Positions 11,551-64,000 of a stretch of 64,000 nucleotides of DNA are shown one piece after another. The stretch is from Takakia lepidozioides. Its lineage: Eukaryota; Plantae; Bryophyta. The stretch's first letter is position 1, and each line of letters begins with the position of its first letter. A program made the position numbers and the translations under genes. Below the pieces are notes generated by a model. That model had not been told where the DNA came from. It ran no database searches and saw only the letters and a list, made by a program, of their open reading frames with translations. The DNA lies in the NCBI GenBank assembly GCA_030704615.1, contig CM060733.1, positions 13,826,001 to 13,890,000 on the forward strand, given 5' to 3'.

Positions 11551-11960
11551 CTCGATTTTTTCCACAAGTGATAGTCCAATACTGTTCATGTACACTCTCA
11601 CCTTGAGATCTGCATAGCCTCAGCTGTTACATAGGCTTGCACAGGATTCAGCAAGTCTGGCATTCCTTCAACTGTAAATCTGTCAACAGGATTGCTCGAA
11701 CATTTTGAGATCCTGCAGTGATATCAATCAGAAGCTTCAAGAATGGATACAAGCAAACATTGTCACACGATTGATATGGATGAATGTTGTCGCAAATGTG
11801 CCGACGATTGGATCTACCAGTGGCTCAATCGTTGATAGGAACATCCATCCAGAGTGTCTCCTCCCTCCCGCTGCAAGTGCCAGTCTCCCAAGAAAGGGAG
11901 GGAGGGAGAGCAGACAGTGGCGCAGGAGATGATCGAAAGCGCTCAGAGCAGAGGGGGGCA

Positions 11961-14290
11961 ATGGATACTACAGCAGCGGCGGAGTTGGGGATGGGGGGGG
12001 CAGGGGGGGGTGTTGATGGAGTTGGTTTCTGGGATTCAGGAGCTGTGGAAGCAGGGGCATGGGGAGAAGAGGACTTTGAGATTGAGGAGGAATCCTGGGA
12101 GAGGGGAGGGGACGGAGGTGCAGTTGCAGAAGTTCCAGGAGCAGCAAAGGGAGTTTCAGGAATGGGGCAGCGCCGCCCCGGGCCCTCTGGCCCTGAGCCT
12201 CCGCACAAACGTATGAGATCCATGCCTGGTGAAGCTCATCAGACTCCCCCAGGTGGTGTAGGGTTTGGTGCTGGTCCCAGCCCAGGTTATAGCGCAGGTC
12301 CAGGGCCCGGTGCAGGTCCGGGAAGAGGAGGTTTCGGCCCTGGCATGGGACAAGGTGGGCCTGGTGGCAGATCCAACGTGCATCCGAGTGGCCAGGGGTT
12401 TGGTCCCGGTGGAGGGTTTCCAGGTGGCCGAGGTTCAGGACAAGGTATGGGAAGGGGTCGAGGGATGGGAAGCATTTTTTATAAGACTAAACTATGCACT
12501 CGATTTCGCAGTGGCAACTGCCCTTACAATTCAAACTGTAATTTTGCACACGGAATGGAGGAGCTTCGGAAGCCGCCTCCTGGATGGGAAGAGTTTGTGG
12601 CCTCCCAGGAATTACCACCTGCACCAAGCCCATCCCCTAGTCAAGGTGGGTCAGCTGGAGGAGGAGGAGGAGGAGGGGGTGGAGGGGGAGGTTCCACAGA
12701 TTCGCAGGTCCGTTTTCACAAGACCCGCCCCTGCAAGAAGTACTTTGGTGAGGGCAACTGCCCTTATGGAGAAAATTGTAATTTCTTGCACGATGAGCAG
12801 AGTGCACCCCGGGCAGTTAGGGAGATGAGGGAGACTGCTGCTGTTGTCCTTACCTCCACAGCAAGCGTTTCCAGTGCGGGTAGTGATGGAGGGACGCCAG
12901 CTGGTGGGGGGGCAGTGGTAGCAGGTGGGGGATTGAATGTTCGACCTCCCAATTGGAAGACCCGACTCTGCAACAAGTGGGAGACCACTGGACATTGTCC
13001 CTTTGGGGATAAGTGTCACTTTGCTCATGGGGCTGATGGTACGTTGAGATTTTCCTATTTTGGGTTGCTGGAGTCTGATTGTTCCACCTTGTGGTCTCAC
13101 TGTTGCCTTTCTCCGTTGGGATCACAATATGTCCTGCATAATATTGCTTCTGTCTGCCTTTGATGGTTGATTGACTTTGTTGTGAGAAGACTTATTAGGT
13201 TTCTGGGTTATAAATAAACCTAAAAAAGAGACACTGAGTTTGGTTTTTGCAGAGCAAGGAAGAGGGGCAGGGGAGAGGGATACAGAATGGGGGCCACTAC
13301 CATTGCAGGCTAGCTGCGATATGTCGTCTTCTAGATATAGCATAGCACCAAACTATTGTAGGGTGTATTCACCAGAATCCCTCACCCACAGCTTTTATTG
13401 TTCTCCTGAGTCCCTAATATATTGACACAGATTTCTGATGCTTTCAAGAGGGTCTCACATCTCTTTGTGTGTGTGTGTGAGTGACACAGAGAGAGAGAAC
13501 GTACTCATAAGACGTCTGCCGTAGCCTTGTGGCCATAGATCCCGCGCCCAGTTTGGGCGGAACAAAAGAGAGAGAGAGAGAAAAAAAATTGACGTATATC
13601 TACTACTGGGTACTACACTGTCTTCATGGAAGGGGATGCTTGACTGCAAGAGGGCTTGTTCCTTTCTTCAATTTCTTCTTTGCCTGCTCTGATTGTCCTT
13701 AGCAGAAACCAAAGGTTGAAGAGGAGGTTTAAGTGTGGTCTACAAAATGAGAGTCTGAAATCAGACTCTCATCAGACTCTCATTGCTGGTTTTACACTGA
13801 TTGTTTTACTCTGGGTTTTACTCTGGGCCTTTCTTTCTTTTCTCCATCTCTGTTTCTTCTTTTTTTAAAGTTATCATTACACCTGAGCAGCACAGTCTTT
13901 TCCTTGTATGTAAATGAATGAGCATTTTTTAATCATACAGAATTGCAAAGATATGGTGGAGGGCCAGTGGATCCCAATGCTCCAGCTCCAGCAGGTGGTC
14001 TGGCAGTTTCTGACTTCAAGCCAGGAGGCACATCTGCCAAAAATCATGCAGACACAGGAGGTGCCTCAGTAGCTGGCTTAGGCGCTTATGGCCACGAGGG
14101 GGCAGATCAAAGACAGCTAGGTGGTGGGCCCTTGCTGCACCAAAATTCAAGGGGGATTTACTCAGGGGCAGGAGGTCCAAAAGTGTTGGCTAATTGGAAG
14201 GGCCCGCTAGAAATTTCTAACATATATGGAGATTGGATTGGAGAAGACGACTGGGACCATTTTCATCAGACCACAGAAAGAGGAGTGTGA
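11961..14290 (+). CDS. CCCH zinc-finger protein with three fingers, AtC3H12-like; exons 11961-13038 and 13941-14290 (about 475 aa; alternative in-frame ATG at 11784)
   Basis: [33 protein letters not shown] and [19 protein letters not shown]; Gly/RG-rich N-terminus; GT at 13039 and AG at 13940 join to HGADELQRYGG; conserved C-terminal NWKGPxxISxIYGDWI. Confidence 0.92.
13501..13570 (+). repeat. about 70 bp dispersed repeat in the CCCH intron, shared with 53889-53960
   Basis: gtactcataagacgt..gccgtagccttgtggccat.ga.cccgcgcccagtttg.gcggaa at both loci. Confidence 0.8.
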
Positions 14291-15206: not shown

Positions 15207-17968
15207 CTACTGCACCAACACCTCTGCGACAGGCAATTGGAATTCAGATTGAAAAGAACCAGGATTTTCCTTAGAGCTTAAAGCACGTTTGTTGCCAAGT
15301 ACAGTTTGTCCATCGGGAATGGTGTCTTTGAGTATAAGAACAAAGAAGACAATGATCTTGAAGCCTGCACTGGCAAGATTCTCAGCAGGCGGCTTGCTTT
15401 TGATGACAGTCTGGGTATTCTGCACTGAGGCAGGCATTGTTGACCAGAGAATCGTGGAACCCAAGCCTTTCTTCAAGATAGAATCCATCTGTGTCCCGCA
15501 ATATTGTGCATGAAATCCAACTTGGACAGGGTCATTTGCGCCACCAGAGATTGCTTTCACTCCGCTGCGGGTTGATCTTCGTTTTGTTGACTGCGTGAAT
15601 GCTTCTGAGTATATAGTGCAGACTCAGTCAGTGCAGAATGTGAATTTGGGAGACAACTGGAGATCAATGGATTGCCTTTCAGTATTAAGTGTCCTCATCT
15701 TACAACAAAACAGTGTGCAGGGGAATTTACATAATTTATAGCCTTGTACAGTGTCAGGTTGAGACAGATCTATCTTCACATTGATCACATCAATGTGTAG
15801 ACTAAAAAGACACATCAAACGTGAGGAAACAGGTAGGAAACATGCACCGAGCAGCGAGCTTACCAAAGACGTCTCTACGTTCAACCATAGCGTTCTCCAT
15901 GCAATCCAAGAATCGCTCATATAGTAGATGGCCACGCCGTAGATATGGATTGCGGCGCTGCGACACGATCTTCAGTGGGTGCGCCTTTGGGGGAAGCAGG
16001 AGATTAAGATTCTCCTGGCTACGAATGCTCTCCACGTACATACGGACTAGCTAGCTCCAGCACAGTCCCACAAGTATATATCATGAGTAATAAATGAATA
16101 AATGTCTGTATCACAATACCTCGCCCCCAGTGGCAAGACTACAGGTCCAGAAGTTCTGACATCATATCAGCAACTCATCTCTGGATATGAGCAAAAACCT
16201 CATGAAGATCTGTCACGGTATGTTTTGAACTATCAAGTGCAAGTTCTATCCACCACTATGAATATTTACAGAGTCTGTTGAGAGAAGGACAAGTCTCTGC
16301 GAGAAACTGTAGAGGTTGTTAAATAATACCTTTCTGCGCAACCGCTTGTCGGTGTCTAGCGTAAGGGAGGCAAGGGAAATTGGATCCCAAGGGACTTCGA
16401 TTACAAAGTCAGTCACTGCTCCTGTTAGTGCGTTGCGCTGTTTCATAGTTGACAGAGAGAATACAATGTTGGTAACCGATTCTGCGAAATCCAAGTTCCT
16501 GACATCCACATGCAGGGATCGGACTCCTGCCAAAGACGTACGAGTTATGTTTCATGCTTCTCGACAACTTCACAATTTTGTTTATCAAACTGCAGCCCGA
16601 AACCCACTCAGCTTGATCTGCCTCAGAGAAACATGAACATGCAGGCCTGTCGCCTTTGCGAAGGAAATGCGATCAACTAGTGATTAGTCAAAATGGAGAC
16701 CTCAAGGGCGACTCAATGCAGGCGAATATAACCTCTGTGGAAGCTGAATTCATACTTCAAACGAATTTAATGATAAACCATAGTGCGGTAGATTTATGTA
16801 TATAATTACAGCGGACCTAGAGATCCGTGAGATGAGTATTGATAACTGGTTATTTGGGTATGACTGACTCACATTACGTGAGATTACTTAAGCTACTTTG
16901 CGAAACTTGAAGTAGACCATGTCTATTTAAACACTGGTTCGGACAGCTCGAAACTTGGTCTTGAAAACCAGGCCTAAACTTTACAGGGGACAAGATGATT
17001 GAACTCCTCTTGATGCTGTTGGTCCGAGACCCAGGTCAGTCATGGGTATACACGAGGTATACACCTGATCTGGAACTTAATTTTACGGATCATTTTGTTA
17101 GTTAACGGCAATATGAATTTAACTTTCACGATTTTTATTTCAATTCGAGATCAATCACGCTATTGGATTTGGATTCATAGACTTGTCGAACTCACCTGCA
17201 GCTGCGGCACGCAGAAGAGCGCTGGCAACATCATCATCATATTGTCGCAGGTGACCAGTTAGAGCGTCCCTGTAATGGACCACAATACCATGTGCGTGCC
17301 TGGATGTTGACGACGGTAATAAATTCTGCATGGTGGAAACAGGATTGAAGAATGTTCAGAGCTCGAAGTATTTTAGATCAGTGACTGACTACTACCTCGC
17401 AATCACACAATTTCCTATAATCTGGTCCAAACTGTCGTTGTAGAATGTTGCACGTAGAAATATGCTTTCTCAAAGATTGGACATTTTCAAAAGCATCCAT
17501 TATTGCTTATTGCTTGCAAATCACCGAAGTCCACTTGAGTGCTTAGTATGGTCTGAAAGTAAATGCATCAGATTGTAGAGACATTTTACTACGACATAGA
17601 GAATATTCACATAACCAGGTCTCGACATAGCTATCTATACTCTTCATCAGCATCTTGGTATCCAGTAGTACCTGTGGAGGGGCCGGCCCAACAGATGGGA
17701 CTTCTGCGACACGATCAATAATTAGGATTCCCCGCCGTTGTCCACTGCTCACATTGGTTTGCACCATATTTCTTAAATCAGCAGTGTAGTGAGCACCCCC
17801 GGGATGTACAGCGGAGGCTATGGTGCCAAGATCAAGTGTATGCAATCCAGAGGCAACCGCATTTCGAATGCTTTGGGCATGACCACGGCCATACAGCTTC
17901 CATTGAGTATCCTCCCGCCACCATACCCCTGGTTCTGTTGGGTTAGCACAAGCTCCGAGGATGCACAT
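15207..17968 (-). CDS. Gene A: WWE-WWE-linker-PARP/ART-like protein, about 402 aa; exons 17968-17672, 17325-17196, 16526-16330, 16050-15864, 15604-15207
   Basis: All introns are GT-AG and the exons sum to 1209 nt in frame. WWE-like 1: GVWWREDTQWKLY..IRNA..YTADLRNMVQTNVSSGQRRGI. WWE-like 2: VHYRD.LTGHLRQYD..FSLSTMKQRNALTG. ART-like: RNPYL..LYERF / VGFHAQ..DSILKKGL / IIVFFVL / QLPVAEV. Confidence 0.8.
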
Positions 17969-19116
17969 TATGGCCGATGACGGAACAAAGTTCGGGCACC
18001 TTCAGAGCAAGAAAGTGGTGTTCCGCCACCTTAGGAATGAGAGGAAGCAGCCTCAGAGTAACAGCTTGGGGAGAAACCTAAGTTATAGATTCAAAGCTGC
18101 CGACACAGATTGAGGGGGGCGCGCACTGAGCACTCCAGTGCATTTAATGACACGTGGTATAACGCATGCACTGCGAACCTGAAGAGAAAGAAAGTGTAAC
18201 TTAGAGCCAGACAGAGGAGAGAGAGAGGTGCAGTGACGAGGCAGTGGGAACTGTAGCCGTTGCATGCATTATGTGCACGAGATTAGCAAGTCCCCACAGA
18301 TCATCCGCAGTTGTGTACCAGCTTACTGCCTGCCGTGGCCCACCATACCGGATTCTGAAATACTTGTCAGATACTTGGTGCCCACGTGTACTTGCAAGTT
18401 GCAATGAATCTACCTTTCCTGGATACCTGCCACATTATGAGCGAACTCACAGTCTTGTATAGATCGCTATTTTGGCACCATGGACAACAAACACGAAACT
18501 CTGGATGTTGAAAATTTGAATATAGGTGCAAATGTTTGAATTCTTCAAATTGCAAGGGAGGCAAAATGTCGCATGTTTAAGATCTATAAACTATCGTACA
18601 CAACAGGGGAAGACGCTCTTGTTTACTCTGAGATCCGTTGCCGTCAATTCATCAGTTGACAATACCGTACATGTGTGTTCAACTGAGATTCGATGTCCGT
18701 GGAATCTAGAAACCTCAGGACTTGATCATTATAAGATTCTTGACCAGATCCTACCATCGTCGTTTCCTCTATTTTGGAGTTGTCTCTCTCAAACGTGTAT
18801 AAGTCGTGAGATCTCCCAATCCCGGCCATACACGAAATATCAGCATTGTACAAGAGAGATCAACTGATTAGTGTCCATGGACATGGCATAGAGGAAAGAG
18901 TTTGTTCTTCTCCTAAACTCTGATTGTATCTGTCTGTCTGCTTGATCAAGGAAACTACTGTTTTTTTGAGGTGAAAGCATTAAGTCGTCCGGTCGCGCTG
19001 CATATGACCAAGACATAGTTTATGCTTTTGAAGTTTTTCAGAGAATTGCATGACGGGATCATGACATCTTCAGGAGGAGGCCAGGATTACAATCAACTTC
19101 AAATCTGTGAGTCCGT

Positions 19117-21003
19117 TCAGTGGACAGCAATCGTTCCAACAGGGAGCTGATGCGCTATTGAGCTCACTGTCAATACACCTTCCCGGGCGCCACTATATGT
19201 TCTGTGAACTTGATGCGCATCGCTTGTGATGACGAAAAAGACGAGTAGCTGAGGAGCAGGATATTGCTGACTTGGCAGATCACCATGGCGCTGGGCTGCA
19301 TACGGTATGCTCACAGCTGCCTTCAATCCAAACCAATCCCGATCCCCGGTTCCACGCCGCAGTCCAGGGTTCATGCCGTCTCTCAGGATGGGGTCTACGT
19401 TGATAGGGGGTGACCCGTGAAATACTGCTTGCAATATATCATTGGGAAAAGCAGCTGTCGCTTCCAAGAGCTCCCCTGTCCAAACGGAACAGCTCAGAGA
19501 GAATCACGTAATCCAACTAATGTACTGAATTTGGAAATAGTTCCTATGCTTCTCGAGACCGCATTGTATTTTTATTTTAGCTGGAAATTGCAATTCTCAA
19601 GGGATTCAATAACAGAAAGAGAATGGAGTCTACCTTTGTCTGATCAGATAGTAGTACATGAGAGATTTAAATAGGTTGCCCAAGCCCTGCCGAGTACAAT
19701 AGAACAAGGTTTCGCTAACCGGGGTTCTGTTTGTGAGCCCTGGAAGCACCGTCGTGCAGATCTTTCCAAATGTTTTTACATCGAAACCATACTGATCTAA
19801 ATTTAGCCAGTCAAAGGTATCAATGCTTTCGAGGACTGATATAAAAACGTTCTATATGCTCATACATTGCATATTATCGCTGGTATATGTATGCGACCAG
19901 GAAACTGTAACTCAAGTCTAACAATTTGCTCAGACAGGTGCCTGGATCAGTCTCTCACCGAATCCACCTTCCCGATTCTCGACAGTCTGAATTAAGGTGC
20001 TCAGGAACCGTTCGTAAGGAAGGTGACCCGGGGCCAAGTAGGGGTTGGCGACCGTGTTTTTGGAGACCTTGGCGCCCTGTAGCTTCTGAGAGAGAAGAAC
20101 GTCCAGGTGTTCGGGGCTACGAAGTGTATCCACCGTCATACGTATTATCTGTGCATCACTCAACAGTCGACAGTCAGTACAGAGATAACTATGTTGTGAA
20201 CTCAAAGTCTTGTCTAGACTCTCAAAAGGTCAGCTTGCTCCACTGATGCTAAACTTTCGCCGACCGGGTGCGCCATACAACAGTCTGGATTCGTCTGGTC
20301 AAGACGTCAAGACCGACCCGAGCTGATCAATCCTGGGCTCTAATGCAGAATCACCCGAATCAGTTTTCGAGCAGTTTTCCAATATACGAGTTCTTCAGCT
20401 TGAGAGATAATTTGAACAAACTTGGCTTGACATAAATTCATGAAAAGTCTGGCACAATAGTTTTCACATTGTGTCCAGTTAGAGCACATTGCTGGCCATG
20501 GTATTTGTCTGATTTAAGATTCAACCTGGCCTCTCTTTGAGTAATAACGAACAGCGGCTACACCACTGCTTGCTGCCATACCCACGAGATACTAAGTCCA
20601 GCAACCTGCAGCAAACTCTTGGTCAACAGGTAACCTCCAGAGCCTACCTGGCTCGAGGCTTACCAGTAAAATACTGCTCCCCAGCTTAAGATACAATTCA
20701 TGCAGGATAGCCTACCTTGCGCCGCAGAGCCGTGTCACTTGCAACAGCAAGAGCTGCCAGAGCAGTAGGGTCCCATGGGATCTCAATCACAACGTCTTCT
20801 TCTTTCCCCGAATCTAAGTGCACCTGCTTCATCTTCTTGAGGTCCACCCTTACATCTTCACATCGCTCATTAAGGGTTAAGGAAAGCTTATTGTCGCCAA
20901 TAGCTTTCAAGATGGCTGCAACACACACTGAATCATACTTCCGCAATCTGCCAGTGCTCACACACCGACGGTGGATAATCACATTCTTGGACTCGGGCGC
21001 CAT
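19117..21003 (-). CDS. Gene B: single WWE-linker-PARP/ART-like protein, about 278 aa; exons 21003-20716, 20148-19959, 19475-19117
   Basis: GT-AG introns at the same positions and phases as A and C (after RRK and after FG); 837 nt in frame. WWE-like GRLRKYD..VDLKKMKQVHLDSGKE; ART-like ANPYL..YERF, VFHGS..NVDPILRDGMNP, DWFG..VSIPYA, LLVFFV, VLTV..HQLP. Confidence 0.85.
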
Positions 21004-21216
21004 TGCTCAACAATTTGGACCTTGCAAGTTCAGAGATCACACAGATGCAACAATCCCTCTTCTTTCTGAATTCCCAAAAATAGAATCGGAGATTGTTGGC
21101 AACTTGCAACGCTGCACGACATCTCAAACCTCGCTCACTTTAGTGTAACAAAGCTATTTAAAAATTTGATAGCACAAACAGCACAGGTTTAGGGGATGTC
21201 GGGCGTTTTCTCACTG

Positions 21217-23188
21217 ATTGTCCTTTTATCTTCTCACACCTATGCAAGAGACAAACATAAGTGCCTCCTTGGTTCAAAATGTGCAGAGCCTCTTTCAGTT
21301 GCCCTGCCTCAGTGTCCTCACATGCCTCCAAGGGTGAAACGAAATCTTGTCCACTCCCTCCCTTGGTCCCCTTTCAGAAGAGGTTGTTATGGTTGATGTG
21401 CTTGATTTTATCAGCTGTGCTGCTGCTACTTCTAGTTGACCATCCACCCATGCAGGTTTCTGGTAATAATCAACCCACAGTAGCTCATTGGCACTCTTGT
21501 GCTTGAAATCCAGCTCTCCTGGATGAATCTGGACCCACACTCCATCCTTCCCTCAAGCTATCCCTGACTTGACAACATTCGTGCGTGTGGATCCTACCCC
21601 TTGCCATTTACAGCTGACAGTCGCGATCTCAAATTTTCTAGCACACACCCTAACCTTAACCACACACTCATTTCTATGCTGAATTGCCGAGAAGACCTAG
21701 AATGTGTTGGGAGAGAGGGAGGATAACAATATGTAATAAAGTTTTCCAAGTATCTTGTTGTCTACTTCTGCTACAACAAAACAGGCATTCACCTTTCTGC
21801 CTTGATTGTCCCACTATTGACTGGGGTTTGAGAAGTATTGTTTCCAAAGCTTCTCCTTGCCTATGTTTATGGTTTCCAGATACTTCCCTGCAATCCCATT
21901 GGTAGTGTCAAAACACTCGGAACCACCATAGATTGACCAGAGAGAGCTAAAATACAAAACCCAAGTAGGGATGTATCGGAGAAGCGGACAAAACAAGCCT
22001 ATACAAGTTGAAGAAGAGGGTGCCCACCACAGTGCACTTGACGTTGTGTCATGGAAGCAGCTAGCTTTTCTTTAACCCAAGGATCATTCAACCAATCCTT
22101 ATCCAAAGGACCTCTTGTGTGCACTGCTTATATCTGGAGTCCAGAGACCTTCGATTGATCTGTGGAAACCACAAAGGTGCAGCTGAGCAGCCATAGTTTT
22201 CACCACAGCCTCCTAGGAACAAGCCTACCCTCCTAAATACCTTGTAAGGCAATCATGGAGCATGGAATAGCACTGGCAAAACTTCTTCATAGATCGTTCA
22301 GAATGGCTGGACAACTGCAATTGCAAGGTGCTACTTTCTTCATGTGTGTTGCACATGAGTTTGTCTGTTCTGTAAAAGTGGCTCTTCCTGTTGGTATCTT
22401 TGTTCATTACTTGTAAACAGGGGAAGTGCATTTCCCAAGGGTTTTTCCAGCACCTTTATGGAGAAGTGCTAGTGTAGTTTTGGACAACATTCCCGTAACA
22501 CAATGACGAACATACAAGCATGACCAAACTTAGAGCCGCTAAACAAGCTTGTGCATGTCAAGGCTGCTCCTCTAATCTCATTGCTGAATCACTTTAAGGA
22601 GGTCCACCATCCACACCCGAATCAGAACCGCATATCTTTCCACCATCACCAGACTGTACTCGACCTTGTATCATGGCAATTAGCTTTTCTTTTTCACCCA
22701 AAAAATTTGCGCCAACCCTCACTCCACATGACCGGTTGTGGGCACCGCCTATGTAAGTAGTCTGGAGATTGTGGATTGGTCTGTGAGAACCATGAGAACC
22801 ACGAGGGCGCACCTGAGCAGCCACAGTTTCAACAACCATCGCCCCACCGGCTACCTCGCAAATTTCCGAGTAAAAGTCCTTCGCATCCTGCTGTCATGCC
22901 CTGCTCAGGAAGAACAACCTACAATACTGATATGAAGAGGAGCTCTGTAAGAACAACCGAGATTCTAACTCAACTCACCAACTAAGGGTACAACCAATCA
23001 ACAAAATATTCTCATACCAGAAACTCCCTACATAACAGACTCCTTCACCTACGTGAAAAAAGCAAACCTTGTCCATGCTGTAGTCCCACCATTGTGAAGG
23101 ATGTCCTGCCAGCGCTGATCTATGCTCCGATCATATACGTACCAGATATCCAAAAATGCTTTTGCACGACATTATTACGGCCATTGTC
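21217..23188. mobile_element. about 1.97 kb presence/absence segment upstream of gene B, probably a degenerate insertion
   Basis: Present in copy 1 and absent at about 62570 in copy 2; flanked by direct repeat ATTGTC (21217-21222 and 23183-23188); no recognisable TE protein. Confidence 0.55.
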
Positions 23189-24609
23189 TCACTATCCTAG
23201 GTGCTTCATCGATCGGATTAGATTAGGTCTGCTAGATGGGTCAAAAGGACAATTCCAAGCCTGGATCCTACAGTGCATACATCACAGTGACCCGAAAAAG
23301 AGAAACCGCAAAGCGTTTCGTGTTATCACCTAATTTCACTGGCATGCTTGAAGGCTTAAAGGCACCACGACAAGGAACTGTCCTTGGCGCATTGCCAAGG
23401 GCGATACCGCCTTCAGCTCTATAGCTCCGCCCCTCAATCTGCTGCATGGTGACTGGCCTCTCGCATCACAGAGACGTTGCCTTGGGTATGGAGTCCACAA
23501 GCTCGCTCAGGAGAACACCGGAGCACGCTGCCATCCCCACCAGTGAGCGGAAACGCCAGTAATGGCGGAAGCTCAAATAGTAGCCGGGCTGTAAAGATCT
23601 CAAAAAAACAAACTAAACATGTCTGCCTCCCTGACCGAATATTTCATGAAACATACCACTCCTCCTGAACCTGCTTCATCTACCGCAGATTGGGCACGTA
23701 TGTTCTCGTCCCTGAGAAGAGGGTCGATGAGCTCTTCGCAATGGTGGCCGTAGCTTTCAAGAGGTTGCCGAACAGATGTGAATGTGACCGTATAGCTGCG
23801 ATTTCCCCGACCTCAGATTTTAATGATGTCACTGGAATCGATTCCCACATCTGGCCCACATGCGGGAATCGATTCCCACGAGTGGCCGTGTGGGGCCCAC
23901 TTGGCCACTCCGTGAGTATGTGAGCTCATCAAGACACTAGACGCAGATATCCATCTTTGTCGGCTCTTCACATAAAGGTCGGAGGTCCCGTACTGTCAAA
24001 GGCGGCGCTTAGTGAATACATGGCTTTCATGTATACATCCGTTCTTCTTGCCTGCATGATGGGGGGATCACTGGAAAATGTAAACTGCAAAAAGCAGTAT
24101 TACAGTTTGTCCCGAAATTCTGAGTATCTGTGGGCAGTCTTCAATGGATATGTATCCCTGAGCAAGGCTCTTCAGATTCTCTAGTATCGTTGAAACTCAC
24201 TTAAAGAAAATGTGTGAAAACTCTTTGCGGCAAACTCTTAACGAGTTTATACATAGTCATCTTCATATATAATGATGCAGGCATTGAAGGGGATGATGGG
24301 GAGGCAATCATATCGTGTGTACATAGAGCCTGCAGTATGGCTTGAGTTTTGAGTATTCCATAAGAGTTCCATCGCTGTTGCAGCTGCTCAATTTCCTGTT
24401 TTGCTATTGCCTGCAAGGCCCTGTTGAGTTCTATGCGCGTCTCCGTCGTCTCACTCTCTCTCTCTTTCTCTCTCTTTCTGGAGCTTCTCAGATTATCCCG
24501 CTCGAGTGTCTCTGAGCTGGAGAATAAACTTGTTGGCAGCATCTAGATCTATTCTATTGTGTTTCCTCAGCTTTTGGGTCAGTGCCCGAGCGCATCGCTT
24601 CCGTCTTCA

Positions 24610-27080
24610 ATGTGTGTCTTGCAGCCCTGTGCCGACCCCATCCGTCCTGGTGTATATTGGAGGGAAGATCGTGGGTGGAACTGTATAGTGATGTTGCAGC
24701 AAAAAATATCCGCCATGCAGTCGCAAATGGGCTCAGTCAAATTGATCTTGGGACGATAGTTTCTACCGTGCACCCGAATGGTGCACGCTATGTGTTGAAT
24801 CTGTTTCTGGATCGTATGGAGCAGATGAATGTCCAGAGTGGAATGAAACGGCCAGTGAAGATTGTTGAGCTCGCCAAACCTGTGCCATCTACTCCGGCCG
24901 GCCCTACACGCCAGGTACCCCTACTTCAACAGAGAGGGTCCATGGCGTTCAATGAAATCGTGACCATAAACGTCGGACTCATCTCATGTGCTGAAATGGA
25001 GGAAATACATCTGTAGAAGTTGGAGTCGGACTCCACAACTTGAAATGTAGATCAAGCAGTTAAGCCATGTGCAGGTGTACCAATATCGTGTTTCAATTAA
25101 AGCATCGCTCTTGTGTTAGAAGCAGCGACCAGCGTTTATGTTAGTGATTTAGCGAATAAGTACTTGTTTAGAGTTTGTACTTGCTTGCGAAGCAAAAGAT
25201 TTGGATCGTGGTCGAAGTTCACCTTGTGAGACCAACGACCACATAGGATCTGGATCACAAGGTGAGATCTTCACACAGTCCTCATGTGATAAAACTCGTC
25301 ACATCACTAATGATCAGTCCAGGGGTTGTCCGGGGCTGAAAAGCTCTGGTCCGTTTTTGCATGGCTGTGCACAGTTAACTATTGAGGCGCCAGCTCCTCC
25401 AGCCGGTCCGAGTGGTTTGATTTTCCACTACAAGGACCCTCTTACAGGAAAATTTCGGGCATACGATGCAGATGTCGGCCGCGCTCTCCTAGATGCTGCG
25501 TTTGCAGGTAATTTGTACTGTATACAAACTCCCATCATGACAGCTGCCACTTCAATTATTCAGGTAAGCATGCGGACATCGCAGTGTTAATTGATCATAC
25601 ATTTGGGGTGTGAATTGCAGCTATTCAGATCTAATATTGCATTGTGCATAATTCTGAATGCCACGCGCTCACTAGCAGTGAAGGTTAAGGTTTTACAATT
25701 GAAGTTCTAGTTTTGCCGACTCTTTGTACTTAAGCCCGTCTGGATATGATATTCTTCACGTTTTGACAGGCAAGAAATCGTTGACACTCGATGTCAATCT
25801 CGACTACTGCAATGTCACTATTGTTTTTGACCTTACAACCATGAAGCAGCGTAACCAGAATACAGGAGAAGAGACAGAGTTTGTAGCCGAGATGCAGTGG
25901 GATCCGCTGCAACTTGCTTCTGTGGCCGAAGCATCTGACAAGTTTCTACGTAGAAAGGTAGTCCGGGAATACTTTCTACTTCCAAGCATTCGTTCTCGCT
26001 CCTACCAGTTGACACTATATTACTCTTGAAAGAAGCTTCTATAGATACTGTGACTGACTAAAGAGTTCAGATCTCTAAGTTTTAAACTGGGTTAGCAAGG
26101 TTTTTTTTTTGCATTGCTTGAGTACTGAACATCAGGCTGGGCACACTGTCCTAACTTGACTTAAGATGTCCCACAAAGCCTTATGAGGCGCCCTTGATGG
26201 ATTGTATGCTGTCAGTCAGAGTACGTTCTTGCTGGAAAAAAAATGGAATGTTTGCATTGGAGCACGCCTAATTGGAAACGAAGCTGAACAGGGACGCAGC
26301 ACTGTAATTATCAGTTTTGCTGAGGGACTTGGGTTGGCAGATTCTAGGCATGTTTATCGACAACTTTCGCAGTCAGGAAAACCTGGACCAAGTGATAGTT
26401 CCCTCCATGGCGCACCCTTTGAGGATCGTAACCAAACGTCGTAACCCTTTCCTCCGAATTGGGCTCCCACTGTACGAGCGATTCATGGATTCGATGGAGA
26501 CCGTTTTGATTAAACAGAAGAATGCCTTCGGGAAGACTGCCTTCGGTAAGTTTGGGTCATTCCTTCGACAATTTTTGTTTGGTACAGCATAGTATGCTTT
26601 TGTGGATTGTAGTCACCCGGAAAAGTGTCTCTCAGTGTTCAGTATGGAACCGTACTACTGCATGCCGCGCGTCTTCCCCCTCACCGTTTCGCTGACATGC
26701 ATGGAACAGATTCAATACTGCGTGCAACCAAGAAAAGTATAACTTGCCTGGCAGAAGGTGGCGTGATTAGTGATGACACGCCCATGCGCGTAGGATTTCA
26801 CGGCCAAAATTCAGGAGTGGAAGTAAATCCAATTTTCGAGAACGGCTTATCTCAGAAGAGCACAGTGGTGTGGTCGACCATGGGGGCATCAGTGCAAAAC
26901 ACTCTTGTCTACAGTAAAAGCAAGGCATTCGGTATGGGCGCCGGGCCTGTCAACTTCAAGATAATCGCTTTCCTCGTTTTGCTGGTTTCTCCAGGGCCAA
27001 CGTATGATGGCAATCTGGGGGGTTGCTTCAGCACTCAGCAAGAGTACTCGCTACCTTTTGCAGAGGTGGTCGTACGTTGA
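24610..27080 (+). CDS. Gene C: WWE-WWE-linker-PARP/ART-like protein, about 385 aa after correcting one -1 frameshift near 24680; exons 24610-24914, 25375-25507, 25770-25957, 26341-26545, 26755-27080
   Basis: Exon-for-exon homologue of gene A: MCVLQPCADP.RPGVYWRED; FHYKDPLTGKFRAYD; FDLTTMKQRNQNTG..WDP; RRNPFL..LYERF; VGFHGQ..NPIFENGL..WSTM.ASVQNTLVYS..KIIAFLVL..SLPFAEV. Introns are GT-AG. Confidence 0.8.
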
Positions 27081-33479: not shown

Positions 33480-36400
33480 AGATAATTTGAGACAATCACC
33501 TACATTTCTCAAATTTCAGTTCCCAGGATAAAGAGGATATTGATCATTTTGTGAGTGAAGCTAAAATCAAGTTGGAGGCTCAATATAAGCAGAAGATATT
33601 AGCAAACAAACTATACCTTCTAAGACAGCTTATGAACATACAGATGCAGTCAGGAGACACCATGACAAGTCACATCAATGAGCTTAGAGAATTGTCACTA
33701 CAGCTAGATACAGTGGGAGAGTCAGTGAGTGATGGCATGTTAGTAATGGTTTTGTTGTTAAGCTTGCCAGAGAACTATCACAGCCTCATTACTGCTCTAG
33801 AGAGACTAGGACAGATGCTCTGATGTTGGAACTTGTAAGTGTGAGGTTGATGCATGAGGAGTTGGAGATGGAGATGAAGGCAGAAAGGACATCTTCAAGT
33901 GATGAAAAAGATTTTTATGTATAGAAGCTGAAAAGAAAACCCAAACAAGAGTCATATGGACAGAAAAACCAACAATCGCAGAAAAAGTTCAAGCGGAGAG
34001 GTATAGTAACAATTGCCATGAGCCTGGCCATTGGGTACAAGAATGCCCGCATCCAAAGAGGTCCGCAGAGAATGGGCAAGCACATACAGTTGAGAATGAT
34101 TTTGTTTCAGGTCCAGAAGCTTCAAAATCAGGGAGCTGGTATGTTGACTCTAGTGCGTCACAACATATGTCTTTTCAAAAAGAATTATTCTCAGATTTGA
34201 AGGAGATTCCTAAGACTAGGATTTACTTGGGAGATAATTCGATACAAGAGGCTGTGGGAAAGGTAGTTATTGACATGTTAGTCAATAACAAGGTAAAAAA
34301 AGGTCGTCTGCATGATGTCCTATTTGTGCCAGGTTTGGCCAAGAACCTTTTCTCAGTCAGTAAGGCTACAGCCAAGAACTTATCTGTTGAGTTTAGTAGC
34401 CGAAATTGTCAGATCAAAGATGATTCTGGAAATATCATAGCAGAAGCTGTGATGGATGGTAGACTGTACAGATTGCTTTGTAGCTCAGAGATGGCAAATG
34501 AATATGCTCATCTTGGAAGAGAGCAAAAGCAAGATGCGTCACTTTGGCACAGAAGAATGGGACATCTTAGTGTTCAGGGCTTTAGCAAATGCAAAAACTT
34601 GATCTAGTGGATGGAATAGATGTTAGGCCATGTGAGGCTAATCTACAGGGTTGCAAAGGTTGCTTGCTTGGCAAGCAAAAGAGACTTCCTTTTGCAAGTG
34701 GTGAAGCAAACAGAGCTTCTAAGCCTTTGGAGTTAGTGCACTCCGATATATGTGGACCCATGAAGAACAGCTCTTTGGGAGGCTGGGATGGCAAACTCTA
34801 CAAATTATGGGATCCTGAGAAGAGAAAGATGGTGACCAGCCGGGATGTAGTGGTATTGGAGAATACTATAGAAGTACCAGAGACTGATGAATAGATTCTG
34901 GAAACAAGCTTTAAGGAGGAGCTGCCATTAAAGATTTGGAATCTTTTGGAAATACAAGAACTAGTGGGAGAAGTGGAACAACAGGCAACTGAAGTGGAGC
35001 CCTTACCATCCATTCAACCTATAGTGGCAGAGTTGTAGCCAATGCGAGGTAAGCTCAAAGAAGAGATTTACATGCAACTTCCAGAGGGGTTGCAAGTGAA
35101 GGAGAATGAGCAAACACTTGTTTGTAGGCTTCTCAAGACTCTCTACAGGTTGAAGCAGGCACCCAGAGCTTGGTACCAGAGATTTGATAATTTCCTAGCA
35201 AAACATGGATTCCTGCGATGTGATTCTGATCTTAGAGTCTATGTTCTAGGAAGTAGAGAGAGCATTTTGATCTTGGCAGTATATGTGGATGATCTAATCT
35301 TGCTTTGCAAATCACTAAACAAGGTCAATGAAATCAAGAAGATCTTGTCTTCTGAGTTTCAAATGACAAACCTTGGGGAAGCAAAATACCTATTAGGCAT
35401 TCAGATCATAAGGGATAGAGTGCAAGAAACCATTTCACTCAGTCAGGCTCATTACATCAGCCAGATTCTTAAGAGGTTCAATATGGAGGATTGCAACCCA
35501 ATCTTTACTCCGCTGGAAGTTGGAAAAATGTTATCCAAACAACATGAGCCCCAGACAAAGGAGGAGCAGGATGAGATGACTGAGGTTCCATACTGTCAAG
35601 CTGTTAGCAGTCTAATGTATGCTATGACAGACACTAGACCAGATGTAGCAGTTGCAGTTGGAATGGTGAGTCAGTTTATGGCAAATCCAGGGATTGCTCA
35701 TTGGAAAGCAGTCAAGAGAATCTTCAGGTATTTGAAGGGGACTCAATAGATGGTTCTGCAGTTTAAGGCTGGAGCAAATGATGCTTTGGAAGACAGTTGT
35801 GATTCAGATTGGGGTGGGGACTTAGATAGTAGGAAGTCCACCACATGTTATGCCTTTACTTTGGGCAGTGGCGCAATCAGCTGGAATAGTAAAAAACAAC
35901 CTACAGTTGTTGTGTCTACTACAGAGGCTAAATACATGGCAGCTGCCCAAGCTGCAAAGGAGGCGATGTGGTTGCGAACGCTCTTGAATGAGCTGAACTT
36001 CATCCAAAAGAGGACAACCCCGATCAAGAGCGATAACCAAGGTAGCCTTGCTTTGATTAAACACCCAGTCTTTTATGCTCGAACCAAACATGTTGATATT
36101 CAGCATCATTTTGTTAGGGAGCAGTCTTTCATTATTGTAAGACAGAGAGCTGACAACTGACATTTTGACGAAAGGTGTTCCAAGACCGAAGTTGGAACAA
36201 TGCATAATACAGCTAGGGTTATGTGAACAATGAAGATTCACAAAGTGGGAGTGTTAGAGAGTTTGTTCACTTCAGTGTAACTGATGTTCCCTGAATAGCA
36301 AGTTGGATATTGTTAGATGCTTTTGTTATTCATGTCATGACAGACAGAGAAAAGGCAGAGGAGTGCAAATAGGAATAGCACTAGTTGAGGTTTGTGTATT

Positions 36401-45022: not shown

Positions 45023-45470
45023 ATGTCTAGTATATATATATATATAGGCCGAATTGCTGATTTTAACTCTCGTTTGGAATATAGACATTTTCTTATTTAT
45101 GTATATTTAGTGCATTGAGCTGATTATGCAATTGAACCAAGTTGGTCCATTAATAAAGAATGTTATAAGAATTTTACTAATTTTCGTCATTAAAAAATCT
45201 TATCTCACATTCATTTCTTCATGCCATTATTATTTACAACACATTATTCTATTATTATTATTTGTTAATAATATTTTGTAATAGTTTTAATCACATCAGG
45301 TAAAAAATGGAGCTACATGATTACACACGCAGTTAAATCTTCTTCCCAAAATACATACTTAATAGAGCTCTACAATTAGCAACAAGGAGCTTTACTTGTC
45401 AAATATCTTTATCTTTACATACCCCCAAGGTTTTGTGGATCATAGCAACATTTGTATTCAGACTTGCAAC

Positions 45471-57888: not shown

Positions 57889-59390
57889 CTGTTTCATAGT
57901 TGAGAGATTGAATACAATGTTGGTAACCGATTCTCCGAAATCCAAGTTCCTGACATCCACATGCAGGGATCGGACTCCTGCAAAAGACTTACAAGTTATG
58001 TTTCATGCTTCTCAGCGACAACTTCACAAATTTCTAATCAAACTGCAGCCCGAAGCCCACTCAGCTGTGCGTTATCTGCCTCAGAGAAACATGAACATGC
58101 AGGCCCGTCGCCTTTGCGAAGGAAATGTGGTAAACTGGTGATAAGTTCAAAATGGAGACCTCAAGGGCGACTCAATGCAGTTGAATATAACCTCTGGGGA
58201 AGCTGAATTCATACTTCAAACGAATTTAATGATAAACCAGGTGCGGTAGATTTATGTATAATTACCTAGAGGTACGTGAGATGAGCATTGATAACTAGTT
58301 ATCTGGGTATGACTGCGACTAATTACAATACGTGAGATTACTTAAACTCCTTGGCGAAACTTGAAGTAGACCATGTCGAAACTTGGTCAAACCAGGCCTA
58401 AACTTTACATGGGACAAGATGATTCTTCCTCTTGATGCTGTTGGTCCGAGACCCAGGTCAGTCATGCGTATACAACTGATCTGGATCATTCTGTTAGTTA
58501 ATGGCAATATGAATTTAAGTTTCACGATTTATAATTCAATTCGAGATCAATCACGCTCTTGGCATTGGACTCATAGACTTGTAGAACTCACCTGCAGCTG
58601 CAGCGCACAGAACAACACTGCCAACATCATCATCATATTGTCGCCAGTGACCAGTTAGTGGGTCTCTGTAATGGACCGCCGGGACAGTACCAGATCCGTG
58701 AGTGGATGTTGACAACGGTAACAAATTCTGCATGGTGGAAACAGGATTGAAGAATGTTCAGAGTTCTAAGTATTTTAGATCAGTGACTGTCAACTACCTC
58801 GCAATCACACAATTTCCTTAATCTGGTCCAAACTCTCGTTGGAAAATGTGGCACGTAGATGTATTCTTTCTCAAAGCCTGGACATTCTCAAAAGCATCCA
58901 TTAGAATTGCTTATTGCTTGCAAATCACCAAACTCCACTCCCGAGTGCTTAGTATGGTCTGAAAGTACATGCATCAGATTGTAGAGAAAGTTTACTACGA
59001 CATAGAGAATATTCACATAAACAGGTCTCGATGTCCATAGCTATCTATAATCTTAATCAGCATATATGTATGGCTTGTCTGTCTTGGTATCCAGTAGTAC
59101 CTGTGGAGAGGCCGGCCCAATACATGGGACTTCTGTGACACGATCAATAATTATGATTCCCGCCGTTGTCCACTGCTCACATTGGTTTGCACCATATTTC
59201 TTAAATCAGCAGTGTAGTGAGCACCCCCGGGATGTACAGCGGAGGCTATGGTGCCAAGATCAAGTGTATGCAATCCAGAGGCAACCGCATTTCGGATGGA
59301 ATGACCAGGGCCATACAGCTTCCATTGAGTATCCTCCCGCCACCATACCCCTGGTTCTGTTGGGTTAGCACAAGCTCCGAAGATGCACAT
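57889..59390 (-). pseudogene. Gene A': 3'-truncated copy of gene A (WWE region only); exons 59390-59101, 58727-58592 and 57977 to about 57889
   Basis: Homology to A stops inside exon 3; CCC vs CCCC frameshift at 59159-59161; no ART exon downstream. Confidence 0.85.
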
Positions 59391-60480: not shown

Positions 60481-62350
60481 TCAGATGCAGAGAGTAATCG
60501 TTCCAACAGGGAGCTGATGCGCTATTGAGGTCACTGTCAATACACCTCCCGCGGCCTGAACTTGAGCCGCATAGTTTGTGATAATAAAAAAGACGAGTAG
60601 CTGAGTAGCACAATATTGCTGCAGACCACCAATATAGTTCTTCAGTGCATACGGTATGCTCACAGCTGGCGTCGATCCGAACCAATCCCGGCCGTCTGAA
60701 CGCCGCAGTGCAGGGTTCATGCCGTCTCTCAGGATGGGGTCGACGTTGATAGGGGATGTCCCATGAAAGACAACTTGCAATATATCATTGGGAAAAGCAG
60801 CTGTCGCTTCCAAGAGCTCCCCTGTCCAAACGGAACAGCTCAGAGAGAATCACGTAATCCAACTAATGTACTGAATTTGGAAATAGTTCCTATGCTTCTC
60901 GAGACCGCATTGTATTTTTATTTTAGCTGGAAATTGCAATTCTCAAGGGATTCAATAACAGAAAGAGAATGGAGTCTACCTTTGTCTGATCAGATAGTAG
61001 TACATGAGAGATTTAAATAGGTTGCCCAAGCCCTGCCGAGTACAATAGAACAAGGTTTCGCTAACCGGGGTTCTGTTTGTGAGCCCTGGAAGCACCGTCG
61101 TGCAGATCTTTCCAAATGTTTTTACATCGAAACCATACTGATCTAAATTTAGCCAGTCAAAGGTATCAATGCTTTCGAGGACTGATATAAAAACGTTCTA
61201 TATGCTCATACATTGCATATTATCGCTGGTATATGTATGCGACCAGGAAACTGTAACTCAAGTCTAACAATTTGTTCAGACAGGTAGCCTGGATCAGTCT
61301 CTCACCGAATCCACCTTCCCGATTCTCGACAGTCTGAGTTAAGGTGCTCAGGAACCGTTCGTAAGGAAGGTGACCCGGGGCCAAGTAGGGGTTGGCGACC
61401 GTGTTTTTGGAGACCTTGGCGCCCTGTAGCTTCTGAGAGAGAAGAACGTCCAGGTGTTCGGGGGTACGAAGTGTATCCACCGTCATACGTATTATCTGTG
61501 CATCACTCAACAGTCGACAGTCAGTACAGAGATAACTATGTTGTGAACTCAAAGTCTTGTCTAGACTCTCAAAAGGTCAGCTTGCTCCACTGATGCTAAA
61601 CTTTCGCCGACCGGGTGCGCCATACAACAGTCTGGATTCGTCTGGTCAAGACGTCAAGACCGACCCGAGCTGATCAATCCTGGGCTCTAATGCAGAATCA
61701 CCCGAATCAGTTTTCGAGCAGTTTTCCAGTATACGAGTTCTTCAGCTTGAGAGATAATTTGAACAAACTTGGCTTGACATAAATTCATGAAAAGTCTAGC
61801 ACAATCGTTTTCACATTGTGTCCAGTTAGAGCACATTGCTGGCCATGGTATTTGTCTGATTTAAGATTCAACCTGGCCTCTCTTTGAGTAATAACGAACA
61901 GCGGCATCCCCGCTGCTTGCTGCCATACCCACGAGATACTAAGTCCAGCAACCTGCAGCAAACTCTTGGTCAACAGGTAACCTCCAGAGCCTACCTGGCT
62001 CGAGGCTTACCAGTAAAATACTGCTCCCCAGCTTAAGATACAATTCATGCAGGATAGCCTACCTTGCGCCGCAGAGCCGTGTCACTTGCAACAGCAAGAG
62101 CTGCCAGAGCAGTAGGGTCCCATGGGATCTCAATCACAACGTCTTCTTCTTTCCCCGAATCTAAGTGCACCTGCTTCATCTTCTTGAGGTCCACCCTTAC
62201 ATCTTCACATCGCTCATTAAGGGTTAAGGAACGCTTATTGTCGCCAATAGCTTTCAAGATGGCTGCAACACACACTGAATCATACTTCCGCAATCTGCCA
62301 GTGCTCACACACCGACGGTGGATAATCACATTCTTGGACTCGGGCGCCAT
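60481..62350 (-). CDS. Gene B': WWE-PARP/ART-like paralogue of B, about 272 aa; exons 62350-62063, 61495-61306, 60821-60481
   Basis: 819 nt in frame with GT-AG introns; VFHGTSPINVDPILRDGMNP..DWFG..VSIPYA..LLVFFII..VLTV..HQLP. Confidence 0.85.
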
Positions 62351-64000
62351 TGCTCAACAATTTGGACCTTGCAAGTTCAGAGATCACACAGATGCAACAA
62401 TCCCTCTTCTTTCTGAATTCCCAAAAATAGAATCGGAGATTGTTGGCAACTTGCGTGCAGCGTTGCATGCACGACATCTCAAACCTCGCTCACTTTAGTG
62501 TAACAAAGCTATTTAAAAATTTGTTAGCACAAACAGTACAGGTTTAGGGGATGACGGGCGTTTTCTCACCGAGTCTCACTATCCTAGGTGCTTCATCGAT
62601 CGGATTAGATTAGGTCTGCTAGATGGGTCAAAAGGACAATTCCAAGCCTGGATCCTACAGTGCATACATCACAGTGACCCGAAAAAGAGAAACCGCAAAG
62701 CGTTTCGTGTTATCACCTAATTTCACTGGCATGCTTGAAGGCTTAAAGGCACCACGACAAGGAACTGTCCTTGGCGCATTGCCAAGGGCGATACCGCCTT
62801 CAGCTCTATAGCTCCGCCCCTCAATCTGCTGCATGGTGGCTGGCCTCTCGCATCACAGAGACGTTGCCTTGGGTATGGAGTCCACAAGCTCGCTCAGGAG
62901 AACACCGGAGCACGCTGCCATCCCCACCAGTGAGCGGAAACGCCAGTAATGGCGGAAGCTCAAATAGTAGCCAGGCTGTAAAGATCTCAAAAAAACAAAC
63001 TAAACATGTCTGCCTCCCTGACCGAATATTTCATGAAACATACCACTCCTCCTGAACCTGCTTCATCTACCGCAGATTGGGCACGTATGTTCTCGTCCCT
63101 GAGAAGAGGGTCGATGAGCTCTTCGCAATGGTGGCCGTAGCTTTCAAGAGGTTGCCGAACAGATGTGAATGTGACCGTATAGCTGCGATTTCCCCGACCT
63201 CAGATTTTAATGATGTCACTGGAATCGATTCCCACATCTGGCCCACATGCGGGAATCGATTCCCACGAGTGGCCGTGTGGGGCCCACTTGGCCACTCCGT
63301 GAGTATGTGAGCTCATCAAGACACTAGACGCAGATATCCATCTTTGTCGGCTCTTCACATAAAGGTCGGAGGTCCCGTACTGTCAAAGGCGGCGCTTAGT
63401 GAATACATGGCTTTCATGTATACATCCGTTCTTCTTGCCTGCATGATGGGGGGATCACTGGAAAATGTAAACTGCAAAAAGCAGTATTACAGTTTGTCCC
63501 GAAATTCTGAGTATCTGTGGGCAGTCTTCAATGGATATGTATCCCTGAGCAAGGCTCTTCAGATTCTCTAGTATCGTTGAAACTCACTTCAAGAAAATGT
63601 GTGAAAACTCTTTGCGGCAAACTCTTAACGAGTTTATACATAGTCATCTTCATATATAATGATGCAGGCATTGAAGGGGATGATGGGGAGGCAATCATAT
63701 CGTGTGTACATAGAGCCTGCAGTATGGCTTGAGTTTTGAGTATTCCATAAGAGTTCCATCGCTGTTGCAGCTGCTCAATTTCCTGTTTTGCTATTGCCTG
63801 CAAGGCCCTGTTGAGTTCTATGCGCGTCTCCGTCGTCTCACTCTCTCTCTCTCTCTCTCTCTCTTTCTGGAGCTTCTCAGATTATCCCGCTCGAGTGTCT
63901 CTGAGCTGGAGAATAAACTTGTTGGCAGCATCTAGATCTATTCTATTGTGTTTCCTCAGCTTTTGGGTCAGTGCCCGAGCGCATCGCTTCCGTCTTCAAT

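What the first reader, a model, noticed from the sequence alone, without database searches (positions are those of the whole stretch)
15207..27080. Cluster of an apparently undescribed WWE(-WWE)-PARP/ART-like gene family lacking RST
Seen: three spliced paralogues (A and B on minus, C divergent on plus) can be assembled with canonical GT-AG introns at conserved positions and phases. All share a WDP..LA......D..LRRK linker, NP(Y/F)L...YERF, FH(G/A) and a terminal LP motif. Established: WWE domains bind ADP-ribose/PAR and follow the pattern W..W..Y...I..A...Y.IDL..M.Q.N..TG..R; PARP catalytic domains have N..L..RF, FHG....I...G, a YF strand, S..Y and a terminal LP strand. The known plant WWE-PARP proteins (RCD1/SRO) have at most one WWE and a C-terminal RST domain, whereas tandem WWE plus PARP is typical of animal antiviral PARP12/13. 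Inference: this is a lineage-specific ADP-ribose reader/writer (or NAD-binding) module, and its clustering and turnover resemble defence gene arrays.
Basis: partly seen in the sequence, partly recalled or inferred. Interest (0 to 1): 0.92.

Follow-up and report, generated by a model that had tools for sequence, protein, structure and literature searches.

The report
Overlooked plant ADP-ribose reader–writer genes
These three neighbouring plant genes belong to an old, apparently undescribed family (also present in a freshwater green alga and in conifers) that joins ADP-ribose-binding WWE domains to a stripped-down ADP-ribose-transferring enzyme domain; one copy looks like the enzyme and the other two like binding partners that lost the enzyme site.

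Summary
Genes A (402 aa, open) and B (278 aa, open) on minus and C on plus splice with GT-AG introns in matching phases, but C has a 1-nt frameshift in exon 1. Both WWE repeats and a PARP-type ART fold are confirmed, and the stop codon follows the last ART strand, so there is no RST. 'Lineage-specific' is wrong: Klebsormidium genes have the same five exons, intron positions and WWE-WWE-ART layout, also clustered head-to-head. Cryptomeria has a B-like protein, Taxus has partial ART relatives, and presumed protists have the ART alone. It is not SRO/RCD1 and not PARP12/13: the catalytic domain is about 115 aa and shortened. B keeps a mono-ART-type site (H-W-V, S..Y, short β4-β5 loop) but has a degenerate WWE. 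A and C keep all five WWE1 ligand residues, but their ART has lost the family's R and D[YWF]F motifs. Best reading: B is a writer and A/C are pseudo-enzyme readers. No activity was tested, and a defence role rests only on copy turnover. No paper describing the family was found. The scan had already noted the duplicated copy at this window's end and an H-W-V gene on another piece of this genome.

The parts
17672..17968 (-). Gene A exon 1: start codon and WWE1 (about 17929-17726) with all five ADP-ribose contact residues
   Evidence: Pfam WWE E 5.7e-8, 33.5 bits, above cut-off; aligns to TRIP12/HUWE1 WWE; residues from PMC11269756
17196..17325 (-). Gene A exon 2: N-terminal half of WWE2
   Evidence: frame check; WWE2 profile hits DTX1 E 1.4e-6, HUWE1 7e-5
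16330..16526 (-). Gene A exon 3: C-terminal half of degenerate WWE2 and WDP..LRRK linker helix
15864..16050 (-). Gene A exon 4: N-terminal part of the ART domain (NPYL...YERF)
   Evidence: 41% identity to Klebsormidium P0005, E 4e-9
15207..15604 (-). Gene A exon 5: degenerate ART core (FHA at 15515-15507, WSTM at 15446-15435), stop directly after the last strand
   Evidence: hhalign to B-type profile P 96%, E 1.6e-9; model pLDDT 73, top 28 fold hits nearly all ART-fold proteins but Z at most 5.3
20716..21003 (-). Gene B exon 1: start codon, single degenerate WWE (WWE2 type, no internal intron) and linker
   Evidence: Pfam WWE E 0.053; first row of the WWE2 profile; covered by a contig with the B-specific letter
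19959..20148 (-). Gene B exon 2: N-terminal part of the ART domain
19117..19475 (-). Gene B exon 3: minimal ART core; H 19419-19417, G, R 19359, W 19335-19333, S 19311, Y 19302, V 19176-19174
   Evidence: model pLDDT 82; Foldseek PARP10 E 2e-4; VIA Z 9.3 to PARP10; residue map
21217..23186 (.). About 2-kb insertion between B and C, absent from the duplicated copy; origin not identified
   Evidence: self-blastn; no informative Pfam match
24610..24914 (+). Gene C exon 1: WWE1 with ligand residues kept, broken by a 1-nt frameshift near 24680
   Evidence: two-frame tblastn match to A exon 1; Pfam WWE E 0.012
25375..25507 (+). Gene C exon 2: N-terminal half of WWE2
25770..25957 (+). Gene C exon 3: C-terminal half of WWE2 and linker
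   Evidence: Pfam WWE E 0.015
26341..26545 (+). Gene C exon 4: N-terminal part of the ART domain
26710..27080 (+). Gene C exon 5: degenerate ART core (FHG 26796-26804, WSTM 26871-26882, TLVY 26901-26912)
57889..59390 (-). A': broken duplicate of gene A (7-nt deletion in exon 1, cut inside exon 3, no match to exons 4-5)
60481..62350 (-). B': intact duplicate of gene B (272 aa), 99% identical up to 19429-equivalent, catalytic exon only 70-75% identical in protein
63998..64000 (+). Start of C', which runs off the window
   Evidence: self-blastn 23186-24611 vs 62573-64000, 99.6%

Best explanation
An old streptophyte family of small WWE-ART proteins, separate from SRO/RCD1 and PARP1-3. The Klebsormidium members (and by inference the ancestor) are WWE1-WWE2-linker-ART, with a ligand-binding WWE1 and a mono-ADP-ribosyltransferase-type site (H-Y-V). 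In this genome the paralogues have split the job. B is the writer: it binds NAD+ through H-G-S, W-F and S..Y and transfers one ADP-ribose (no catalytic glutamate, short beta4-beta5 loop), with variable loops around the acceptor site choosing the target. A and C are readers: WWE1 binds ADP-ribose or poly(ADP-ribose), while the remodelled ART domain serves as a conserved non-catalytic surface. Shown here: gene structures, folds, residue patterns, homologues, purifying selection on A versus C. Inferred: NAD+ binding and transfer by B, ligand binding by WWE1, inactivity of A/C, any partnership between them, and any stress or defence role.
For: Fold of B exon 3 is PARP-type. H19, W47 and V100 fall at the end of strand 1, middle of strand 2 and start of strand 5, with a 7-residue beta4-beta5 loop; PMC2848248 gives 6 for mono-ARTs and 36-38 for polymerases. 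H-G-[TS], R, [DE][YWF]F and S..[YF] are conserved in nearly all of 25 family rows, and the third position is hydrophobic in most. In A/C the R and D[YWF]F are lost, A has HA instead of HG, and the branch to A/C is about 4 changes per site while their WWE1 and exon 4 stay about 41-42% identical to Klebsormidium. WWE1 keeps the equivalents of HUWE1 W1619, Y1658, Q1667, N1669 and R1676; WWE2 and the WWE of B lack Y1658 and R1676. B versus B' changes fall in loops and spare the core.
Against: No biochemical data. W in place of the second-position Tyr may block activity, although it recurs in several Klebsormidium-type rows. The register of A/C around WSTM is ambiguous, and C keeps H-G and a T..Y, so it may still bind NAD+. 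The A model is modest (pLDDT 73, Z 5.3 or less). No transcript of A or C and no splice junction were seen. C is frameshifted. The closest sequence match of the first motif is Tpt1, not a PARP.
Confidence: 0.47

Rival explanations
1. The ART domain acts on nucleic-acid ends or small molecules, or simply hydrolyses NAD+, as Tpt1/KptA, DarT or Arr-like minimal ARTs do, rather than modifying proteins.
For: Best sequence matches of the family profile are Tpt1/KptA (E 4e-6 and 7e-8); 16 of 27 rows match NCBIfam RNA 2'-phosphotransferase weakly; short D-loop with an invariant Arg; Tpt1 Z 7.8, Arr 6.9.
Against: The Tpt1 match covers only about 35 residues (the HGT..I..G..P motif); the Tpt1 RNA lobe and second His are absent; whole-domain fold matches are PARP10/12/14/15/16; the PARP-type N..L..RF segment and Q/E-L-P strand are present.
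Confidence: 0.22
2. All three proteins are catalytically dead ADP-ribose or NAD+ binding scaffolds, like RCD1 or PARP13.
For: No catalytic glutamate in the window's proteins; B has W at the Tyr position; A/C are degenerate; RCD1 is a precedent in plants (PMC2848248).
Against: H-G-[TS], F and S..Y are conserved from Klebsormidium to conifers and presumed protists, a pattern expected from NAD+ binding; mono-ARTs also lack the glutamate.
Confidence: 0.2
3. The cluster is a decaying array without current function.
For: C is frameshifted, A' is broken, and a third A-like copy seen in contigs has frameshifting deletions; B versus B' dN/dS is 1.3, compatible with neutral drift.
Against: A, B and B' are fully open; A versus C shows strong purifying selection; B' indels keep the frame and core residues; contigs cover B exons only.
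Confidence: 0.07
4. These are SRO/RCD1 genes that lost RST and duplicated WWE.
For: Plant WWE plus PARP-like domain; RCD1 and wheat SRO1 are in the fold list (Z 7.5 and 7.3).
Against: Only 6-8% identity in those alignments and lower rank than animal PARPs; neither appears among all 60 profile hits at E up to 1; the domain is much shorter; no RST; the family exists in Klebsormidium with its own exon pattern.
Confidence: 0.04

Closest known systems
Klebsormidium nitens GAQ77964/KFL_000060290, KFL_000060300, KFL_000060320 (uncharacterised 'WWE domain-containing' proteins); Cryptomeria GLJ48846; Taxus KAH9312189, KAH9303956
   Same: Same family. Klebsormidium genes have WWE-WWE-ART, five exons with introns at the same places, and a head-to-head cluster; the Cryptomeria protein has B's single-WWE layout.
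   Different: All are database hypotheticals. They keep H-G-T, R and D[YF]F; the A/C-type remodelled ART was found only in this window.
Animal WWE mono-ARTs PARP7, PARP11, PARP12, PARP13/ZAP, PARP14 (clade 3 of PMC2964712)
   Same: One or two WWE domains before a C-terminal ART with a hydrophobic third triad residue and short beta4-beta5 loop; includes a pseudo-enzyme member; best fold matches are in this wider group.
   Different: No CCCH, macro or RRM domains; ART core about 115 aa against 170-200; W at the second position in B; WWE1 rather than WWE2 keeps the ligand site (PARP13: PMC9720839); 11-19% identity.
Plant SRO/RCD1 (PARP clade 2)
   Same: Plant WWE plus PARP-like domain; RCD1 is a PAR reader with an inactive PARP domain (PMC2848248, PMC10115779), as proposed for A/C.
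   Different: No RST, tandem WWE, shorter ART, intact H-G in B and C, no profile match to RCD1/SRO1 structures.
Tpt1/KptA NAD+ lobe and minimal bacterial ARTs (Arr, DarT, TreX/TreTu)
   Same: Small ART core, HGT..N..SIL..G..P..R motif, short D-loop.
   Different: No RNA lobe or second His; PARP-type N-terminal segment and C-terminal strands; fused to WWE; spliced eukaryotic genes; no bacterial or viral locus found.

Membership tests
WWE domain (PF02825) | Profile match above cut-off or to solved WWE structures | tested here: met
   A exon 1 33.5 bits vs 21.1; WWE1 profile to TRIP12 E 3.9e-5; WWE2 profile to DTX1 E 1.4e-6
WWE domain (PF02825) | ADP-ribose contact residues (HUWE1 W1619, Y1658, Q1667, N1669, R1676) | tested here: met
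   All five kept in WWE1 of A and C; Y1658 and R1676 lost in WWE2 and in B
WWE domain (PF02825) | Measured ADP-ribose/PAR binding | not testable with these tools
   needs a binding assay
PARP-type (H-Y-x) ART superfamily | ART fold | tested here: met
   B: Foldseek prob 1.00, Z 9.3; A/C: homologous by hhalign P 96%, weak fold Z 5.3; 17 of 27 family rows hit PF00644 at E up to 0.05, the window exons alone do not
PARP-type (H-Y-x) ART superfamily | NAD+ site H-G, second-position aromatic, S..Y | tested here: inconclusive
   Met in B with W for Y; partly lost in C; largely lost in A
Poly(ADP-ribose) polymerases (H-Y-E, clade 1) | Catalytic glutamate and 36-38-residue beta4-beta5 loop | tested here: not met
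   V in B, loop of 7
Mono-ARTs of clade 3 (PARP7/11/12/13/14) | Hydrophobic third residue and short loop | tested here: met
Mono-ARTs of clade 3 (PARP7/11/12/13/14) | CCCH/macro domains and full-length 170-200 aa catalytic domain | tested here: not met
   Pfam finds only WWE in the full-length relatives; about 105 aligned of 170-200
Mono-ARTs of clade 3 (PARP7/11/12/13/14) | Placement in clade 3 on a tree | not tested
   no reference PARP sequences could be fetched with a usable id
SRO/RCD1 (clade 2) | C-terminal RST domain | tested here: not met
   stop codon follows the last ART strand in A, B, B', C and relatives; no PF12174 hit
SRO/RCD1 (clade 2) | PARP domain closest to RCD1/SRO1 | tested here: not met
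   absent from 60 profile hits at E up to 1; rank 17 and 19, 6-8% identity in fold search
Tpt1/KptA | RNA-binding lobe and H-H-h triad | tested here: not met
   match limited to about 35 residues; second position is Y/W/F

The most novel reading that the evidence does not exclude
A head-to-head gene pair encoding an ADP-ribose sensor (A/C: WWE reader on a pseudo-ART) and an executor (B: mono-ART or NADase with fast-changing acceptor loops) forms a plant innate-immune module, working like paired NLRs and independently mirroring the animal PARP12/PARP13 writer-reader pair, inherited from streptophyte algae.
Probability: 0.14. Interest if true: 0.88.

Novelty: new variant of a known kind. Interest (0 to 1): 0.62.

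Why it matters
Plant ADP-ribosylation is known from PARP1-3 and the mostly inactive SROs; few plant mono-ADP-ribosyltransferases or ADP-ribose readers are described. A separate family, old enough to share four introns with Klebsormidium, with a mono-ART-type site and a textbook WWE ligand pocket, gives small proteins (270-420 aa) that can be assayed directly. The apparent split into writer and pseudo-enzyme reader paralogues, and a W at the triad's Tyr position, are testable predictions. If they hold, they add a branch to plant NAD+ signalling outside the flowering-plant models.

Tried and rejected
The joined (spliced) proteins were not handed to any search or folding tool; models were searched exon by exon by reference, and joins were only checked for frame in a script. 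Pfam on window ART exons: no hit. Atlas search with C exon 5: no usable hit. Pattern scans of metagenome, prokaryotic genome and viral contigs: nothing confirmed (searches failed on a too-diverse alignment), so no support for a bacterial or viral source. PADLOC: one weak DarT hit, rejected. Hits P0010, P0014 and P0015 are bacterial repeat proteins matching only 'DWF', rejected; P0012 (6725 aa, 23-residue match) was not examined and not used. Positive selection on B versus B': dN/dS 1.34, bootstrap P 0.23; the core differs more than pooled non-coding DNA (17.7% vs 8.9%, P 1e-5) but not more than the adjacent 3' flank (14%, P 0.22), so a mosaic of tracts of different age explains it as well. Exon-wise trees are too short to settle whether A, B and C arose in this lineage. 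An upstream WWE1 exon for B was looked for and not found. Literature searches found no description; the library lacks most subscription papers. The host species was not identified.
Full report
Setting. The window is from a land plant: it holds a PLS-type PPR-DYW gene and a CCCH zinc-finger gene, a RAM2-like acyltransferase and a copia-type retroelement. The species was not identified.

Observation. Gene A (minus, five exons, 17968-15207) gives 402 aa without a stop. Gene B (minus, three exons, 21003-19117) gives 278 aa. Gene C (plus, five exons, 24610-27080) is open from exon 2 on. All introns are GT..AG, with phases 0,1,0,1 in A and C; B's two introns match the last two. C exon 1 is 305 nt and matches A exon 1 in two frames, so it carries a 1-nt frameshift near 24680. 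A versus C shows purifying selection: dN/dS 0.14-0.42 where measurable, dS saturated elsewhere. The joined proteins were not used in any search; every search was exon by exon or with database proteins.

Surroundings. The stretch 16438-24611 is duplicated at 57889-64000. A' is broken, B' is open (272 aa), and C' starts at the window's end. A 2-kb insertion between B and C is in the first copy only. The copies are over 99% identical from 19429 upward and about 85-93% below; the switch lies just before the catalytic His. B/B' changes fall in loops and leave H-G, DWF, S..Y and LP intact, but positive selection is not established. In two putative RNA runs, contigs cover B exons 1 and 2 only inside exon limits, with no junction. 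Another contig comes from a third A-like copy whose letters match neither copy here. Expression of B is therefore suggested, not shown.

Relatives. B exon 3 against 1.84 billion representatives gave 21 hits. The named ones are from Klebsormidium nitens, Taxus chinensis and Cryptomeria japonica. Klebsormidium GAQ77964 (417 aa) and KFL_000060300 have two WWE stretches before the ART. They have five exons with boundaries at the same places as gene A, and lie in a three-gene cluster with a head-to-head pair. A second Klebsormidium-like locus has the same pair and is probably orthologous. The Cryptomeria protein has B's single-WWE layout; the Taxus proteins are partial. Environmental relatives, presumed protists (an Atlas cluster is mostly Haptophyta), carry the ART without WWE. 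No angiosperm, prokaryotic or viral member was found, but these searches are insensitive and absence is not shown.

Domains. WWE1 passes the Pfam cut-off and aligns to TRIP12 and HUWE1 with the equivalents of W1619, Y1658, Q1667, N1669 and R1676, the ligand contacts reported in PMC11269756. WWE2, split over exons 2-3 in A/C and whole in B exon 1, is a WWE by profile but lacks the Tyr and terminal Arg. B exon 3 folds with pLDDT 82 and matches PARP10, 14 and 12 by Foldseek. By VIA-align it matches PARP10 (Z 9.3, rmsd 3.1, 105 aligned), PARP16 and tankyrase; RCD1 scores 7.5 at 8% identity and Tpt1 7.8. H19, W47 and V100 sit where PMC2848248 places the triad, and the beta4-beta5 loop is 7 residues, as in mono-ARTs. 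Across the family the pattern is H-[YWF]-mostly hydrophobic, with a conserved Arg in a short D-loop. The last exons of A and C are homologous to B's (hhalign 96%) but have lost the Arg and D[YWF]F, share a new WSTM.ASVQNT motif, and sit on a very long branch. A has HA for HG and no stacking Tyr, and its model is a weak ART match (pLDDT 73, Z 5.3). The stop codon follows the last strand in all, so there is no RST.

Mechanism. Most likely (0.47), B is a mono-ADP-ribosyltransferase and A/C are ADP-ribose readers on a pseudo-ART. Folds and residues are shown; activities and partnership are inferred. Rivals: nucleic-acid or NAD+-hydrolysing activity of Tpt1/DarT type (0.22; the first motif matches Tpt1 best), all inactive scaffolds (0.20), a decaying array (0.07), derived SRO (0.04).

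Comparison and novelty. It works like the animal WWE mono-ARTs (PARP7/11/12/13/14) and, for A/C, like RCD1, but it fails membership of SRO (no RST, no specific match), of polymerases (no Glu) and of Tpt1. It lacks the CCCH fingers and full-size domain of PARP12/13, and its binding WWE is the first, not the second as in PARP13 (PMC9720839). The plant PARP surveys read (PMC2964712, PMC2848248) list no such group in the passages examined, and no paper was found. No tree against SRO or PARP clades could be built. Verdict: a new variant of a known kind, an old and apparently undescribed family rather than a lineage-specific one; the defence role is a hypothesis. Interest 0.62.

Noticed in passing
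window 19429 (and 60775 region in the copy): The boundary between the near-identical tract (11 differences in 1672 letters) and the older tract of the duplication falls just before the catalytic His of B, so only the catalytic core and what follows differ between B and B'.
   Followed up: partly
window 17722-19253 (contigs of runs X1, X2): Contigs of 1343-1351 letters join a B-exon-3-like end to an A-exon-1-like stretch with a 27-nt and other deletions; the letters match neither copy in the window, so a third B-A unit exists.
   Followed up: partly
window 21217-23186: 2-kb insertion present only in the first copy, with broken reading frames and an internal repeat (22025-22199 vs 22647-22829); looks like a decayed mobile element, no Pfam match.
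   Followed up: partly
window 8294-11182 and 37456-39581: Intact PLS-type PPR-DYW gene and a 73%-identical, apparently fragmented paralogue 29 kb away.
   Followed up: no
window 11784-13163: Intronless ORF with several CCCH zinc fingers 2 kb from gene A; animal PARP12/13 carry CCCH fingers in cis, but no link was tested.
   Followed up: no
window 34167-36160: Broken copia-type retroelement (Pol_BBD, gag_pre-integrase, RVT_2).
   Followed up: no
window 2348-3798; 45396-45947: RAM2/GPAT-like acyltransferase gene; a weak B-lectin match.
   Followed up: no
proteins P0024, P0027: Environmental relatives carry the same ART behind repeated (V/I)IDL.D.E motifs that resemble SUMO-interacting motifs, and P0027 has an N-terminal RanBP-type zinc finger: a different reader module on the same enzyme (resemblance from own knowledge).
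   Followed up: no
protein P0001; L002:1211-8348: Klebsormidium GAQ83764 and a metagenome locus hold tandem repeats of a related WWE-like plus H-W-V ART unit, a second subfamily in these algae.
   Followed up: partly
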